The notes: generated by a model not told the origin, from the sequence alone. A stretch of DNA of 64,000 nucleotides from Epiperipatus broadwayi (GCA_028023455.1 JAQFVV010000003.1:14198001-14262000); one strand, 5' to 3'; counted from the first letter of the stretch, positions 6,178-63,609 are shown. Translations and numbers: made by a program.

Positions 6178-6255
6178 GAATCTTCAGAACCTAAAGAAAA
6201 AAGGGCGCGAGGACGTCCTAGAGGCAGCAAGAATAAGTCTCCTTTAAAGACAAAG
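6178..6255 (+). CDS. HMGA: HMGA-family AT-hook protein, exon with the extended second-type AT-hook
   Basis: gtag|GAA...AAG|gttagt; 78 nt, phase 0-0; ESSEPKEKRARGRPRGSKNKSPLKTK, versus recalled HMGA2 exon 2 [29 protein letters not shown]. Confidence 0.93.
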
Positions 6256-7120
6256 GTTAGTTTCTATTTTTCATTATATATTTCTTGATAAAACAATATA
6301 CATGTATGTATATTTTTGTAATTTTTTTAACTTCATGTTCAAAAAATAAAAATAGATGGAAGTCGTGTGCCGAGAATATAACTAAGAAATTTAGATGTGG
6401 TCAATGTCGTCTACCTATAGGTATGGACTAAAGCATCATCTGTTTAGTGATAACTTAACTTTCAGGTTTAATTCTGCAATAAGTAAAATGGAAAAAAATA
6501 TCAAACTGATCATTTTCTGGTGCTCAAATATCACATGATCTCGCAAGAAATTAAATATTCTTTTATTTTTAATGAGGAATTATACCAAAAGTTATCTGGC
6601 GACTGTAAAATTCTCCAAATATTACACATTTCAGTCACAACTGACATAAATCATATTTTTAAAGCTAGGATCCATCTCATGTCTACTCATCAATCATCTG
6701 TAAATATTGTAAGGATATAAATTATAGTAACAATTTTCGCAGAAATCAATATTGCTACAAACAGTTAGGTAGGAAAGGGGAATGCATTACTTATCTTTAG
6801 GAACATACTTTTTAAATGGGCCATTTGTTTGAATGAACTATCATTCTCTTATTTCTAAAAATATTTCTAACGCAATTTTTCTGAATTGTAGTAGAATGGT
6901 TTGAAAACAGAATGTCTGTACTTATTCTTTTGTGGTCTTAACCTTTGCTAATGTCATTCATATACTGATAGAATAATATTAACCATAGTGCTGCTGCTAT
7001 CTACTATGATTTTTAAGATTGTTTTATGCATGTTTCTGATAGCAAACTTAAAACAATCATTTTATTGAACCACTGATCATCAAATAATCACCATTCTTTA
7101 AGCTTACACAAGGTGTTTTC

Positions 7121-7200
7121 ACAGTGGCAAAACTCTTCATATAGTAGCACCATTTAGTGCAAGCTAGAGTAATTCAATGGATGCAGGAAGGTTTGTGCAT
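7121..7200 (+). repeat. Diverged copy of one arm of the 11951-12201 inverted-repeat element
   Basis: aaaactcttcatatagtagcaccatttagtgcaagctagagtaattcaatggatgcaggaagg aligns with 11958-12020. Confidence 0.6.
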
Positions 7201-9427
7201 GGAGAATTTTGCATCTGAATTATTTTATTGCTTGGCACTTTCTAACAAGTTTGAGCCTCAGAAGTGATTGAGTTATTAACACCAAAACCATAAGACATTG
7301 TTACAAATTTCTTGGAAGATCCTGTGAGTAATTTTTCGAATAGCCAGTTTTTTTTTTTCATTTCTTCAGTCAGGAATATAATAAACAGAATATTTTCCTA
7401 AGTTGTATCTAAAAATGTTATATCTACATAACTATATAATCAAATTGTCTTAGGTGCAAATTAAGTTATTTGAATATCAGGTTGAAAGAGGTAGAAGTGG
7501 TTTCTAGGTATGTGGTTTCAAATCTACTGCTTCTTATTGATGAAGTATATTAGTCAGAAATTATTGTTGGGATTTGGATGTGACTATCAAGGATCCAATG
7601 ATTACTCAGTCAAAGTTAGAATCTTTGCCTCTGGAGTAGACTAAACACAATGGGGATTATTCTAAATATATAAATAATTGTTGCAAATGGATCAATTTGA
7701 GTTTTTTTTTTTTTTAGTTTAGTATCCTTTAGTGAGTAGTTTAATAAAAGGTTTAGATTTGTCACTAATTAAAAATTTGAGAGAGAAAAATATACAGTTT
7801 TGCCATTTAGACCACCCTTTTTATTTGTAATAATCATTACTGCTTTGCTATTTTGACATTAAAATTTGTTTTTAGAAAACAATTTGAAAATTAATACAAA
7901 ATTATTTTACTAAAACAAAATATTAGATAAGTAGTGGTGGATGTAATGACAAATTAAGAATGAGAAATGCAGGGACCAAACAATCTTTTAAGAAATCTCA
8001 TATTATATTGTTGTCAATTGAAATTAGATTTGAAAAAGCTAATTTATTTTGATTGAAGTATCATTTTATATAAACGGAAGATGATGTCATTTGAGTAAAA
8101 AGAAGAAATCAATTTTAGGCTTTAGATTGATGGATTTGAAAGAGAATAATAGAATAAATAGATGATGGAAGATAAGTAGAAAAAAAAAAAATTAGACTAT
8201 TATGAGGAGAAACAACAATTAAATTAGATAGTTTATTCTTAAGGTAGGAACTATGAAAGATGTGTTAGAATTGTGGGGTAAGAGAGAAATGAGAGAAAAA
8301 TTGATAGATTAGGATTAAAGCAAGGGAAGAAAGATTTGAGAAAGTTGGTCTGAGTGATGAGTCCTCTCTTTGGAAGATAACTAATGATAATGATGATCAA
8401 AGCAATGAGGAGAGAAAGAAGATAAGCAGTTATTATAGTTAGTGCAAAAATAATTGTGAACACATGTATATTAGATAATTTAAATATTTCAAATCAACAT
8501 CATCAATCATTCACAAAGAATATGAATTTTAAAAAAAGTCAGAATTATTGTGCATTTAATTGAAGGATGGAAATAGGAGTGTACAAAAAATATAGCTTAA
8601 TGCTGGAGAAAGTCCAACCATTTAAAAGTATATATATATAAAATAATCATCTAATATAAATATTTGTGTGTGTTTGTTAGTATTTTTTTTTTTTTTAAAA
8701 AGAAAAATGTAAAAATCGGTTGTCTTTTAAAAATTAATGAATAGAACTTCAAAAATATAAATAACTTTTTTTAAAAAAATATTGATATAAAACTGTATAC
8801 AAGATTCTATAATGAAAATTAATTAATAATACATTTAATGACTTTTTTTATAAAACATTTTACATCAAGTTCGTTGTTTTAAAAAAAGTGTTTTTTTTTT
8901 TAAAGTAAAAATCAATATTTTTAATTAATACAACTATTCTCTTTTAATTCTGAAACATAAATTTTTATTGTAAATAGCTAAAATCATTTTATTAACTTCA
9001 TTAAATGGGCTGTGTATTAGAAAGATTTTTAAATAATAAAAAATTTGAAATTTAAGCATCATTTTACTCTTATTTAATAAAAATGCTAAATTAAAATATA
9101 ATATTAAGTACATTTTTTTTTAAAAAAAATAAAAACCTTTTAATGTATGTTGAATGATTTTTTTAAAAAAAAACTCAAACACCAGTAACATAGTGAATGT
9201 CTCTTCATTAAAAATAATTTAAACAAATGTGTATTTTTAAACAAACATTTCGATTTATGATTATACTTTTGGAATGATTTTTATTTAATTAAAGTTTCAA
9301 TTTAGTTAATAAATGTAAGCTCAATTAATTAAATAATTTTTATACAGAATTTTCACCTCATTTACATAATTGTTGATATGTAATATTCGAATTCAAGTAT
9401 AATATATGTACTTAAGTTTTAGATGTA

Positions 9428-9735
9428 ATTAGAGAGGATTTGAACAGACTTTGAAGCTCTTTTCAACCACCCATTTTATTTTATATAACTGATACACATA
9501 ACCACACACATGTGAAAAAGGTAAATGATTTCCAATATACATATTTTGCACTGAACTAGCACTCATCAGTTGGTCTGGATCATCATCTCCCATCCATATA
9601 TATATAATCAGTGCTCAGTTTATATTAAGATAGCAAATCCTCAAACTTGAATGGACTGACTTCAATCCTCTTGACTTTTCAGCCATTCATATCATTGAAA
9701 ATCTGATGATGGAATGTTCAAAGCCCTTGTTCATG
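9428..9735 (+). mobile_element. Degenerate copy of the ~350 bp MITE family (also 15355-15632 and 23873-24222)
   Basis: Shares catcagttggtc..gat, tatattaagatagc.aatc and cattgaaaatctgatgat with the 23873-24222 copy; the right end is missing. Confidence 0.7.
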
Positions 9736-61415: not shown

Positions 61416-61605
61416 TAGTTTAGATTGCGCTTTACGCAAAAAAGTGAAGCTTGTCTCAATCTTATTAAAAGTTACATAAACCAAAACTAAACTTCAGTTA
61501 AAAGTAGATTATGGAGACACAAGGTCTCTGAAAGTGCTAAGCCATATAACTTTTAATAAGATTGAGACAAGCTTCACTTTTTTGCATAAAGCACAATCTA
61601 AACTA
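61416..61605. mobile_element. 190 bp MITE with 59 bp TIRs
   Basis: 61416-61474 versus 61547-61605 reverse complement, with only two mismatches, both CG/TG. Confidence 0.85.
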
Positions 61606-62599
61606 ATTATAATTAAATAAATTATCAAAATTTATTATATCGGCAAACATAATGCTTTATAAAATCAAAAGCCGGTTTCTTTTATCTAATTTCATTAATT
61701 GTCTTGAAAATTATTTGTGTTGTTGTTTCTTTGCATTTAATTTGGTCACAGCTGTCTTTTATTTCAAGATTTTTAGATTAATAGAAGTTATTTTTTTCAG
61801 TAAAACTTTCAGTAATTTTCTTTTCTCCATTTAATTTTTTAAGACTAAATCGAAGCCTTATTGATTATAAGACCTTTTTTATTTAGTTGACCATGCATGC
61901 TTAAGATAAGAATTTTTTAAGTTGAAAATTGATATACCATAATATATTTTTCTTATGAGGAATATTTATTGATACTATGAGCTATAATTAAAAAAGGTTA
62001 TGATGAAAATGACCGGTATTGCGTAAGCAAAAATAAATAAATTATTGCACATATGTAGTGAAGAAAGCCAAACTAGATGAACAATAAAATAAATGTTGAC
62101 TCAGGATTGATAGAAAATACAACAATCTTAGACATGTTTATTATATCATATTTACAACCAAAAACAAATGCCCTAAAGTCACTTACTAGGAAAATTATTT
62201 TAAACAATAAAGTGAAAAAATGGGATTACAGCTAAATAATTAATTATTATATGATGACAAAGAAATAAAAGTTTTAACTTCCTTAGATCATTTATTAACA
62301 AGATATAAAAGTTAACAAAGTTTAGCAAAGACTGACTCTGATCACAGATTCAATGAAAACAAATGAAAATATTTTTTAGATACAACGGTATATAGTTTAG
62401 ACTCTGAAAAAAAAAAAAGGATTGATGTTACTGAATTCTGATGAAAACTTCTAAACATATTATCAACAATATAAAAATGCATAAGTGGAAATCCTCAGGT
62501 TGAAATTGTCTTGTTTTTAGACTTCTTATGAACTAATTGAATTCATTTCTAAAGCATATAATATATAAAATAATTGATAGTGAAACGGGATGATTAGCA

Positions 62600-63330
62600 A
62601 TGAGATGGATAAACTTCTGTATCATAAAAACAGATGTATACCATTGAAAGGCTAGTCAATTTAGAGAAATGCCATTTAGTGAATTATCAAAAAGTGAAAT
62701 TCAATTAATGACAACTAATAGCAATAATATAAACAGTGTGTACATATAATACTGAATTCTTTTTCTGAGATGATATAACTAGGCAACACTAAATGGCAAT
62801 AATTTGACCAACATCAGTTACAAATTCTTCAATGCTTGCACAATATTTTCTAGCAACACCTCATTTAAAGTTATATCATTAATTTAGATATAAATATCCT
62901 ATAATAGTATAAAGTATATCTTTACAAACCATAAATATATATTTAAACATGAAAATACAAAAGAAATTCTATTCACAGTAATAAATGAAATCAAAGAGAA
63001 TATGTTCAAAATGTAATTGGTTACATTGAAATCTTGAACCCAATAACTTAAGAGTTATATCAATTAATATGACAAAAAATTTAAGAAAACAGAATCCATA
63101 TATGATACAACCATGCAGTGAATCTTCAAAGAGATTAAATAATGGTTATGTAATAACAGCTATTTTTAATGATTATGAGAAATGTTTCCGAAAAGGTCTT
63201 TATTGGTTGGCAACTAGATGGGTGAGGAATATGTAAACTTGTTTGTTGAGTATAAATGTTGGATATATTGAGTGAATTCTGTAAATAATATTGGAACTAT
63301 GGGGCAAGAGTTCCATAGTTCCACTAGATA
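62600..63330 (-). mobile_element. Highly degenerate LINE relic (CR1/L2/Jockey-like)
   Basis: Scattered minus-strand peptides (VELWNSCP, DITLNEV...LKNL); their order is not clearly collinear with an intact ORF. Confidence 0.25.
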
Positions 63331-63485
63331 AAAGAATGTTGTATATTTTAAAAGTTATTTTTTCTATGTCTCCCATTATCTAAACCTCATAAATCCAGTG
63401 TTTCATTTAAATCTTCAATATATATATATATTCTTTAGTAATTTGCTTTACAATAAATAAAATATAGATACAGTAAAATTTTCAC

Positions 63486-63609
63486 CTTAAGTGGCCCTGC
63501 TAACCTCTGATCTGCCCCATCTCCTAAAAGTTCAGATTCCCAATCTTCACCTTCTTCTGCAGGATCAAAATTATAAAGAGGCATCAAGTGATGTCTTAAT
63601 TTGTCCAAT
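63486..63609 (-). CDS. SMIM29: SMIM29 (C6orf1) homolog, internal exon
   Basis: tttttaag|A TTG GAC...CTT AAG|gtgaaa; (R)[41 protein letters not shown], versus recalled human [36 protein letters not shown]. An alternative donor is possible at 63505. Confidence 0.85.

What the first reader, a model, noticed from the sequence alone, without database searches (positions are those of the whole stretch)
6178..63609. HMGA and SMIM29 as convergent neighbours, the human 6p21 HMGA1-SMIM29 arrangement, in an apparent invertebrate
Seen: a + strand HMGA gene and, ~37 kb past its stop codon, a - strand exon strongly similar to SMIM29 ([16 protein letters not shown]). No other clearly recognisable host gene lies between them. 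Known (recalled): human HMGA1 and SMIM29/C6orf1 are immediately adjacent, tail-to-tail. Inference: this is an ancient, possibly pan-bilaterian gene pair whose linkage survived heavy TE expansion, which hints at shared regulation or 3'-end interplay. SMIM29 is poorly characterised.
Basis: partly seen in the sequence, partly recalled or inferred. Interest (0 to 1): 0.85.

Follow-up and report, generated by a model that had tools for sequence, protein, structure and literature searches.

The report
Ancient HMGA–SMIM29/C3orf18 neighbour gene pair
An arthropod-type genome carries an HMGA chromatin-protein gene and a SMIM29/C3orf18-family membrane-protein gene tail-to-tail, as human HMGA1 and SMIM29 lie; spiders and a horseshoe crab share the link, so it is probably a relic of ancestral gene order, though many other animals have lost it.

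Summary
Three phase-0 + strand exons encode an HMGA-type protein: AT-hook II, AT-hook III, and an acidic tail whose stop ends at 25881. A - strand exon at 63609-63486 belongs to the SMIM29/C3orf18 family (phmmer E down to 5.6e-14).

I add that gene's last coding exon at 48215-48147, confirmed by RNA contigs. The two stop codons are therefore 22.3 kb apart, not 37 kb, and only transposon debris lies between them.

The membrane-protein gene is the single invertebrate pro-orthologue of both vertebrate SMIM29 and C3orf18, not of SMIM29 alone.

- **Linkage seen:** Parasteatoda is convergent at 7.8 kb. Caerostris has consecutive locus tags on one contig. Tachypleus has the genes 41 kb apart on the same strand.
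- **Linkage not seen:** no HMGA lies within 10 kb in Lineus, Lingula, Glandiceps or Priapulus. Owenia and Brevipalpus have a different neighbour.
- **Other flank:** Lineus, Lingula and Glandiceps have a HEMK1-like gene head-to-head. Papers place human C3orf18 and HEMK1 in the same locus.

Ancient shared ancestry of the pair is likely (about 0.7). Universal bilaterian retention and 3'-end interplay are not supported. This is a new example of a known phenomenon, of moderate interest. The species was not identified.

The parts
6178..6255 (+). HMGA-like coding exon with AT-hook II (EPKEKRARGRPRGSKNK); AG at 6176-6177, GT at 6256-6257, phase 0/0
   Evidence: 13/19 residues identical to AT-hook II of Jaculus HMGA1. 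Aligns with AT-hook II of spider, tick, horseshoe crab and beetle HMGA-like proteins.
21629..21679 (+). HMGA-like coding exon with AT-hook III (QKGRGRPKKR), phase 0/0
   Evidence: Alignment A2 with the Parasteatoda protein.
25786..25881 (+). HMGA-like last coding exon: Ser/Gly linker, run of 12 Glu, Asn, stop TAA at 25879-25881
   Evidence: RNA run X6 of the same species label holds about 2% of the sampled words of 21400-25900. My estimate of what exons B and C alone would contribute is about 2.4%. This is indirect evidence.
25882..27383 (+). Presumed HMGA 3' UTR (extent not measured), with two let-7 8-mer sites at 26872-26879 and 27376-27383
   Evidence: 3 sites in the window against 0.69 expected. 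No such sites lie in the 6 kb downstream of the HMGA stop in Parasteatoda, Caerostris or Tachypleus.
27384..47459 (.). Spacer between the two 3' ends, filled with transposon remains: piggyBac-like fragment 29881-30090, hAT-like fragments 37912-39519, large palindrome about 40948-44619, multi-copy repeats 43788-47333
47460..48146 (-). SMIM29/C3orf18-like 3' UTR, about 0.66-0.69 kb; its end is approximate and lies next to a genomic A-run
   Evidence: RNA contigs X6 47486-47748 and 47740-48113, X9 47485-47731, X8 47459-47636..
48147..48215 (-). SMIM29/C3orf18-like last coding exon (SPSPTDNPKLAFATDLPPMSSL, stop); acceptor AG at 48217-48216
   Evidence: It matches the family's C-terminal pattern. 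RNA contigs stop matching at 48217 and run on 239 nt (X9) and 198 nt (X8) unlike the stretch. Depth is essentially absent from 48319 to 48900: zero in X6, X9 and X13, and 0.7-3.2 in X8.
48216..63485 (-). 15.3-kb intron holding a same-strand RTE-type LINE (endonuclease 53750-54424, reverse transcriptase 52154-53737, further pieces 51477-52121)
63486..63609 (-). Conserved SMIM29/C3orf18 exon: juxtamembrane motif (R)[28 protein letters not shown]; acceptor AG at 63611-63610, donor GT at 63485-63484
   Evidence: The same intron position occurs in six other taxa. Nine RNA runs of six species labels hold 11-17% of the words of 63300-63800; my estimate for the exon alone is about 20%.

Best explanation
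The window holds the 3' parts of two real, convergently transcribed host genes.

- One encodes an HMGA-type architectural chromatin protein. By homology, its AT-hooks bind the minor groove of AT-rich DNA and its acidic tail modulates that binding.
- The other is the single invertebrate member of the SMIM29/C3orf18 family. Relatives are single-pass membrane proteins with a strongly conserved cytoplasmic juxtamembrane motif. The biochemical role is unknown.

Their adjacency is shared with spiders and a horseshoe crab and mirrors human HMGA1 -> <- SMIM29. The most likely reading is ancestral bilaterian gene order. It was kept in chelicerates and on the vertebrate 6p21 copy after the vertebrate duplication that produced SMIM29 and C3orf18, and lost or loosened in several other lineages.

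If anything more than slow rearrangement keeps the pair together, it is more likely a shared regulatory landscape, with HMGA control elements in or around the neighbour, than interaction of the two 3' ends. This last step is inference only.
For: Shown:
- Exon anatomy and reading-frame phases.
- Family membership of the membrane protein.
- RNA support for its last exon and 3' UTR.
- A profile of the window and Parasteatoda HMGA-like proteins retrieves spider, tick and horseshoe crab 'HMG-I/HMG-Y-like' proteins, then vertebrate HMGA1 and HMGA2.
- Parasteatoda has a 91-aa protein with three AT-hooks and an acidic tail, convergent 7.8 kb from its SMIM29 gene with no gene called between.
- Caerostris CDAR_464171 and CDAR_464181 lie on a contig of the same length.
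- In Tachypleus both genes lie on CM014385.1, 41 kb apart.
- Human SMIM29 is downstream of HMGA1 on the opposite strand (PMC8009153, PMC7831742).
- Vertebrate SMIM29 and C3orf18 form one supported clade (96/92), with the window's gene outside it.

Inferred: for one specified pair, chance adjacency is roughly 1e-4 genome-wide, or up to about 1% if both genes merely share an ancestral chromosome.
Against: - No HMGA-like exon lies within 10 kb downstream of the family gene in Lineus, Lingula, Glandiceps or Priapulus. The Priapulus locus is 6.9 kb N.
- The next gene is a dynein light chain in Owenia and a UHRF1-like gene in Brevipalpus.
- In Tachypleus the two genes are on the same strand.
- A review reports that the amphioxus hmga neighbourhood looks like that of HMGA2, not HMGA1 (PMC7013770).
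- HMGA similarity rests on short, low-complexity motifs. A single-sequence search gave one hit at E 8.5e-3.
- The vertebrate arrangement comes from papers, not from a locus I read.
- AT-hook I and the transmembrane exon lie outside the window.
Confidence: 0.7

Rival explanations
1. Chance or independent juxtaposition. The genes are genuine orthologues of the vertebrate genes, but their adjacency arose separately in chelicerates and in vertebrates.
For: The linkage is missing at the 10-kb scale in six non-chelicerate or fast-evolving taxa. Orientation differs in Tachypleus. The amphioxus hmga neighbourhood is reported to resemble that of HMGA2. If both genes merely share an ancestral linkage group, chance adjacency is not negligible (my estimate: up to about 1%).
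Against: The same two families sit next to each other, in the same convergent orientation, in the window, in Parasteatoda and in human. The linkage spans Xiphosura and Araneae, so it is old within chelicerates. Negative results beyond 10 kb were not tested.
Confidence: 0.18
2. The + strand gene is a convergent small AT-hook protein and not an HMGA orthologue, so the parallel with 6p21 is superficial.
For: AT-hooks are short and recur in unrelated proteins. Pfam AT_hook scores fall below the family cut-off for the window exon (13 bits against 17.4). Only two hooks are visible in the window. The let-7 sites are not shared with three other chelicerates.
Against: The extended AT-hook II signature EPKxKRxRGRP(K/R)GSKNK matches vertebrate HMGA. 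The architecture is hook, hook, then acidic tail, with an intron between the hooks and the tail, as in HMGA2 (PMC7279267). Full-length relatives are 87-110 aa with at least three AT-hooks (four in Tachypleus) and an acidic tail. After the chelicerate relatives, most named hits of the profile search are vertebrate HMGA1 and HMGA2, with a few other proteins among them. Its position beside the SMIM29-family gene is itself independent support.
Confidence: 0.1
3. The pair is held together by interplay of the converging 3' ends, such as overlapping transcripts, shared termination or antisense regulation.
For: The orientation is convergent in the window, in Parasteatoda and in human, and the human genes lie very close.
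Against: The SMIM29-like transcript ends near 47460-47486 and the HMGA stop is at 25881. The ends are therefore up to about 20 kb apart, with transposon insertions between. The gap is 7.8 kb in Parasteatoda. In Tachypleus the genes are in tandem yet still linked.
Confidence: 0.03

Closest known systems
Human 6p21.31 HMGA1 - SMIM29 (C6orf1) gene pair
   Same: The same two gene families are direct neighbours, and SMIM29 lies downstream of HMGA1 on the opposite strand, which is convergent (PMC8009153, PMC7831742). The window shows HMGA + and the SMIM29-like gene -, tail to tail.
   Different: The gap is 22.3 kb between stops here and is filled with transposons. The invertebrate membrane-protein gene is pro-orthologous to both SMIM29 and C3orf18. 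NUDT3 and RPS10 could not be looked for beyond the window.
Vertebrate HMGA1/HMGA2 (HMG-I/Y, HMGI-C) proteins
   Same: RGRP AT-hooks, with AT-hook II carrying the GSKNK extension; an acidic C-terminal tail; an intron between the hooks and the tail; let-7 8-mers downstream of the stop.
   Different: Only two hooks are visible and the first exon is off-window. It lacks the Trp that follows hook III in HMGA2 (PMC7013770). The tail is a pure run of 12 Glu. The let-7 sites are not shared by other chelicerates.
Spider and horseshoe crab 'HMG-I/HMG-Y-like' plus 'SMIM29 / C3orf18 homolog' loci (Parasteatoda tepidariorum, Caerostris darwini, Tachypleus tridentatus)
   Same: The same gene pair is linked: 7.8 kb convergent in Parasteatoda, consecutive locus tags in Caerostris, 41 kb in Tachypleus.
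   Different: Parasteatoda has hooks II and III fused in one exon. In Tachypleus both genes lie on the same strand. In the tree the window's gene lies outside the supported spider clade, so the species is probably not one of these.
Human 3p21.31 C3orf18 - HEMK1 neighbourhood
   Same: The invertebrate family gene lies head-to-head with a PrmC_N/MTS (HEMK1-like) methyltransferase gene in Lineus, Lingula and Glandiceps. C3orf18 and HEMK1 are locus neighbours in human and zebrafish (PMC8198806, PMC3296744).
   Different: This could not be checked in the window, because the gene's 5' end is outside it. It is not seen in Parasteatoda, where the upstream gene carries the ESSS domain. That the human pair is head-to-head is my recollection only.
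Ancient conserved microsynteny and genomic regulatory blocks (a developmental regulator plus a bystander gene)
   Same: A developmental chromatin regulator stays next to an unrelated small gene across very distant animals. The linkage tolerates an orientation change, as in Tachypleus.
   Different: No conserved non-coding elements or shared chromatin domain were tested, and retention is patchy. This comparison rests on general knowledge of such blocks, not on a test made here.

Membership tests
HMGA (HMG-I/Y, HMGI-C) | Three AT-hook motifs with an R-G-R-P core | tested here: inconclusive
   Two hooks lie in the window, at 6208-6219 and 21659-21670. No first exon lies in 1-6177. Full-length chelicerate relatives have at least three (four in Tachypleus).
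HMGA (HMG-I/Y, HMGI-C) | Acidic C-terminal tail | tested here: met
   The last exon, 25786-25881, ends in SS, twelve E, N and the stop.
HMGA (HMG-I/Y, HMGI-C) | Sequence similarity to known HMGA beyond the bare RGRP core | tested here: met
   13/19 residues identical across AT-hook II to Jaculus HMGA1. After the chelicerate proteins, most named hits of the profile search are vertebrate HMGA1 and HMGA2, with E down to 2e-4 in 5.8 billion sequences. The signal is weak because the protein is low-complexity.
HMGA (HMG-I/Y, HMGI-C) | Gene structure: an intron separates the AT-hook part from the acidic tail, and the hooks lie on separate exons | tested here: met
   Exons at 6178-6255, 21629-21679 and 25786-25881. 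The HMGA2 structure is as described in PMC7279267. Tachypleus and Caerostris also have separate hook exons.
HMGA (HMG-I/Y, HMGI-C) | let-7 target sites in the 3' UTR (an HMGA2 feature) | tested here: inconclusive
   Two 8-mers lie 1.0 and 1.5 kb past the stop. None lies in the 6 kb downstream in three other chelicerates. The extent of the UTR was not measured.
HMGA (HMG-I/Y, HMGI-C) | Binds the minor groove of AT-rich DNA and acts as an architectural factor | not testable with these tools
   This needs biochemistry.
SMIM29/C3orf18 family (Pfam PF27898 C3orf18_N) | Significant sequence similarity to family members | tested here: met
   phmmer gave 206 hits at E<=1e-3, the best at 5.6e-14. Named hits are SMIM29 or C3orf18 homologues, and nearly all carry a precomputed PF27898 assignment. 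The local Pfam copy lacks this model: genuine SMIM29 proteins also score nothing.
SMIM29/C3orf18 family (Pfam PF27898 C3orf18_N) | Conserved juxtamembrane motif [19 protein letters not shown]...DWExELL | tested here: met
   All 15 invariant columns of alignment A1 are present in the window peptide.
SMIM29/C3orf18 family (Pfam PF27898 C3orf18_N) | Single transmembrane helix just before the motif | tested here: inconclusive
   No such exon lies in 63610-64000. It must lie beyond the window end.
SMIM29/C3orf18 family (Pfam PF27898 C3orf18_N) | Conserved intron positions flanking the motif exon | tested here: met
   The same acceptor, inside the Arg codon before LDKL, and a donor about 40 codons later occur in Parasteatoda, Tachypleus, Lineus, Owenia, Glandiceps and Priapulus.
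SMIM29 proper (orthologue of human SMIM29 only) | Groups with vertebrate SMIM29 to the exclusion of C3orf18 | tested here: not met
   Vertebrate SMIM29 and C3orf18 form one clade (96/92), sister to Glandiceps. The window's gene lies outside it, in an unresolved group that is otherwise all protostome. It is slightly more similar to C3orf18-type sequences (64% against 54% identity).
Ancient bilaterian microsynteny pair | Adjacency of orthologous genes in distantly related phyla | tested here: met
   Arthropoda: the window, Parasteatoda, Caerostris and Tachypleus. Chordata: from papers only.
Ancient bilaterian microsynteny pair | Retention in intermediate lineages (Spiralia, Ambulacraria, Priapulida) | tested here: not met
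   No HMGA-like exon lies within 10 kb in Lineus, Lingula, Owenia, Glandiceps or Priapulus. Larger distances were not tested.
Ancient bilaterian microsynteny pair | Same relative orientation | tested here: inconclusive
   Convergent in the window, in Parasteatoda and in human. In tandem in the Tachypleus assembly.

The most novel reading that the evidence does not exclude
HMGA and the SMIM29/C3orf18 gene form a regulatory block more than 550 million years old. HMGA control elements lie in or around the neighbour gene, so selection keeps the two together. The ancestral block was HEMK1 <-> SMIM29/C3orf18 -> <- HMGA. After the vertebrate genome duplications its two flanks were divided between 3p21 (HEMK1-C3orf18) and 6p21 (SMIM29-HMGA1). 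This would also mean that human height and lung-function signals assigned to SMIM29 act through HMGA1.
Probability: 0.2. Interest if true: 0.6.

Novelty: new member of a known kind. Interest (0 to 1): 0.35.

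Why it matters
HMGA proteins are too short and repetitive for sequence alone to prove orthology outside vertebrates. The review I read (PMC7013770) discusses deuterostome and cnidarian HMGA-like sequences and does not use the words protostome or invertebrate.

- **Orthology by position.** A shared neighbour gives independent, positional evidence that arthropod 'HMG-I/Y-like' genes are true HMGA orthologues.
- **SMIM29 and C3orf18.** The data indicate these are vertebrate duplicates of one ancient gene. 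One flank of the invertebrate gene (HEMK1) matches the C3orf18 locus and the other (HMGA) matches the SMIM29 locus. No single species in my data showed both flanks together.
- **Human genetics.** If the linkage reflects regulatory constraint, it bears on how the human HMGA1/SMIM29 association signals are read.

Otherwise this is one more example of relic gene order. My full-text searches found no paper reporting it.

Tried and rejected
- **Pfam on the SMIM29 exon** gave nothing. The local Pfam copy lacks PF27898: bona fide SMIM29 and C3orf18 proteins also score nothing.
- **Single-sequence homologue search with the spliced 74-aa HMGA part** gave one hit only. A two-sequence profile at a relaxed E-value was needed.
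- **Two locus look-ups were lost** because the isoform is not on record: Pomacea P0106 and Arvicanthis HMGA1 P0292. I therefore never read a vertebrate locus myself.
- **A first HMGA exon in 1-6177 and a transmembrane exon in 63610-64000** were searched for and not found.
- **Rfam at gathering thresholds** gave 0 hits in the whole window.
The word search for HEMK1 found nothing.
- **Species identification failed.** Run labels are coded, the LINE protein's atlas neighbours are taxonomically mixed, and the short protein tree leaves the window unresolved among protostomes. The GC content of 0.27 matches the spider loci, but the window's gene lies outside the spider clade.
- **let-7 sites as support for HMGA identity** were rejected as general evidence. 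They are absent downstream of HMGA in three other chelicerates.
- **3'-end overlap** was rejected on distance and on the Tachypleus orientation.

Full report
**What is in the window**

The window is AT-rich, at 27% GC. On the + strand, three exons with canonical AG/GT borders, all phase 0, encode the following:
- 6178-6255: ESSEPKEKRARGRPRGSKNKSPLKTK.
- 21629-21679: KPESSGPQKGRGRPKKR.
- 25786-25881: ETESSDKAPGSGSGSGSS, twelve Glu, Asn, then the stop.

This is AT-hook II with its typical GSKNK extension, then AT-hook III, then an acidic tail. No exon with a start codon or a first hook lies in 1-6177, so the gene starts upstream of the window.

On the - strand, exon 63609-63486 encodes (R)[41 protein letters not shown].

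**The membrane-protein gene**

phmmer of the 41 residues against 1.84 billion representative proteins gave 206 hits at E<=1e-3. The best was 5.6e-14 at 82-84% identity. Named relatives are annotated either 'small integral membrane protein 29' or 'C3orf18 homolog'. They come from spiders, a sea spider, horseshoe crabs, insects, molluscs, nemerteans, annelids, a brachiopod, a priapulid and a hemichordate, and almost all carry Pfam PF27898. The window peptide has every invariant column of the family alignment.

The local Pfam copy lacks this model, which explains the blank.

Searching for the family's C-terminal pattern revealed a last coding exon at 48215-48147, encoding SPSPTDNPKLAFATDLPPMSSL and the stop. 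RNA contigs confirm it:
- One contig of run X9 matches 47844-48217 without a single difference and then continues for 239 nt unlike the stretch.
- One contig of run X8 does the same from 47702 to 48217.
- Depth is essentially absent in 48319-48900: zero in X6, X9 and X13, and 0.7-3.2 in X8.
- Contigs of X6, X8 and X9 cover the 3' UTR down to about 47460-47486.

The two extra matching bases at 48216-48217 are what splicing from ...AAG onto AGT would produce. Nine RNA runs of six species labels hold 11-17% of the words of 63300-63800, roughly the share I estimate the exon alone would contribute.

The intron positions on both sides of the motif exon are the same in Parasteatoda, Tachypleus, Lineus, Owenia, Glandiceps and Priapulus.

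A maximum-likelihood tree puts vertebrate SMIM29 and vertebrate C3orf18 in one supported clade (96/92), sister to the hemichordate. The window's gene and all protostome genes lie outside it (labels checked). The gene is therefore the pro-orthologue of both human genes, not of SMIM29 alone.

**The HMGA gene**

Similarity is short and low-complexity. A single-sequence search found only one HMGA1 protein, at E 8.5e-3. Pairwise BLAST shows 13/19 identities over AT-hook II.

A profile of the window protein and its Parasteatoda counterpart found, in order:
- Spider, tick and horseshoe crab proteins of 87-122 aa, several named 'HMG-I/HMG-Y-like', with at least three hooks (four in Tachypleus) and an acidic tail.
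- Beetle and fly HMGA-like proteins interspersed among those.
- Mostly vertebrate HMGA1 and HMGA2 from there on, with a few other named proteins among them.

An intron separates the hooks from the acidic tail, as in HMGA2 (PMC7279267). I take the gene to be an HMGA orthologue with about 0.85-0.9 confidence.

Two let-7 8-mers lie 1.0 and 1.5 kb past the stop. The 6 kb downstream of HMGA in Parasteatoda, Caerostris and Tachypleus has none. They are therefore not general evidence for HMGA identity.

**The gap between the genes**

The stop codons are 22,265 nt apart. Between the genes I found:
- a piggyBac-like fragment;
- hAT-like fragments;
- a large palindrome at about 40.9-44.6 kb, with arm segments 94-98% complementary;
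- multi-copy repeats at 43.8-47.3 kb.

I recognised no host gene, though short exons could escape these checks.

**Linkage elsewhere**

| Taxon | What lies beside the SMIM29/C3orf18-family gene |
|---|---|
| Parasteatoda (spider) | HMGA-like gene (91 aa) 7.8 kb from its stop, opposite strand, no gene called between |
| Caerostris (spider) | HMGA-like CDAR_464171 and family gene CDAR_464181: consecutive locus tags, contig of the same length |
| Tachypleus (horseshoe crab) | Both on CM014385.1, 41 kb apart, same strand |
| Lineus, Lingula, Glandiceps | No AT-hook exon within 10 kb downstream |
| Priapulus | No AT-hook exon within 10 kb downstream, but the locus has gaps (6.9 kb N) |
| Owenia | Next gene is a dynein light chain |
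| Brevipalpus (mite) | Next gene is UHRF1-like |

For human, papers state that SMIM29 lies downstream of HMGA1 and on the opposite strand (PMC8009153, PMC7831742). I could not read a vertebrate locus myself, because the look-up failed.

In Lineus, Lingula and Glandiceps the other side of the family gene carries a HEMK1-like methyltransferase gene, head-to-head. C3orf18 and HEMK1 are locus neighbours in human and zebrafish.

**Reading**

The linkage predates the split of horseshoe crabs and spiders. It matches the human pair in gene content and, except in Tachypleus, in orientation. Inheritance from the bilaterian ancestor is the simplest account (about 0.7). Chance re-association is the main rival (about 0.18).

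The flank data suggest an ancestral order HEMK1 <-> SMIM29/C3orf18 -> <- HMGA, divided between 3p21 and 6p21 in vertebrates. No single species in my data shows all three genes together.

Interplay of the 3' ends is unlikely for two reasons. The stop codons are 22 kb apart here, with at most about 20 kb between the transcript ends if the HMGA 3' UTR reaches the let-7 sites. The Tachypleus pair is in tandem yet still linked. A shared regulatory landscape remains possible but untested.

**Novelty**

My full-text searches found no paper on this pair's synteny. The HMGA review I read reports that the amphioxus hmga neighbourhood resembles that of HMGA2. The finding is a new example of conserved microsynteny. 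It is useful as positional evidence for HMGA orthology in arthropods and for the SMIM29/C3orf18 duplication. It is not a new kind of system.

The species was not identified. The data point to a protostome, and arthropod or chelicerate relatives score best.

Noticed in passing
window 26872-26879 and 27376-27383 (+): Two perfect let-7 8-mer sites (CTACCTCA) lie 1.0 and 1.5 kb past the HMGA stop. The window holds 3 such sites against 0.69 expected. No 7- or 8-mer site lies in the 6 kb downstream of HMGA in Parasteatoda, Caerostris or Tachypleus.
   Followed up: partly
window 40948-44619: A large palindromic element: inverted arm segments of 157-246 nt are 94-98% complementary across about 1.8 kb on each side, and a 300-nt direct repeat lies at 41483 and 42011. 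It resembles the 'giant palindrome / twin-arm' elements that other readers noted in this genome.
   Followed up: partly
window 43788-47333: Very high summed contig depth in RNA runs X6 and X9, from many contigs only 85-95% alike. These are multi-copy repeats abundant in the transcriptome assemblies, lying just beyond the SMIM29-like 3' UTR.
   Followed up: no
window 51477-54424 (-): An RTE-type LINE (endonuclease 53750-54424, reverse transcriptase 52154-53737, further pieces to 51477) lies inside the 15-kb SMIM29-like intron on the gene's own strand. A related reverse-transcriptase tail lies at 4382-4672 (-).
   Followed up: partly
L003 1-8077, L005 2101-7530, L009 1926-7015: A HEMK1-like methyltransferase gene (PrmC_N plus MTS) lies head-to-head with the SMIM29/C3orf18-family gene in a nemertean, a brachiopod and a hemichordate. 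It matches the vertebrate C3orf18-HEMK1 neighbourhood and may be an older and more widely kept pair than the one with HMGA.
   Followed up: partly
L004 and L006 (Tachypleus CM014385.1, 126.46-126.54 Mb): The SMIM29-like and HMGA-like genes are both on the + strand, 41 kb apart, so they are in tandem and not convergent. The HMGA-like gene has an extra fourth AT-hook exon (GRGRPQK).
   Followed up: no
L001 24436-26334 (-): In Parasteatoda HMGA-like, AT-hooks II and III lie in one exon. They are on separate exons in the window, Caerostris and Tachypleus, so an intron was lost in that spider.
   Followed up: no
L010 1-3369 (-): In Priapulus the gene upstream of the family gene encodes a 315-aa WD40 protein. 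WDR82 is listed together with C3ORF18 and HEMK1 in zebrafish cisha synteny (PMC3296744). Its identity was not checked.
   Followed up: no
window 19904-20248 (+), 29881-30090 (+), 37912-39519 (-): A gag-like ORF with a CCHC zinc knuckle lies inside the HMGA intron. A piggyBac-like transposase fragment and hAT-like fragments lie in the spacer.
   Followed up: partly
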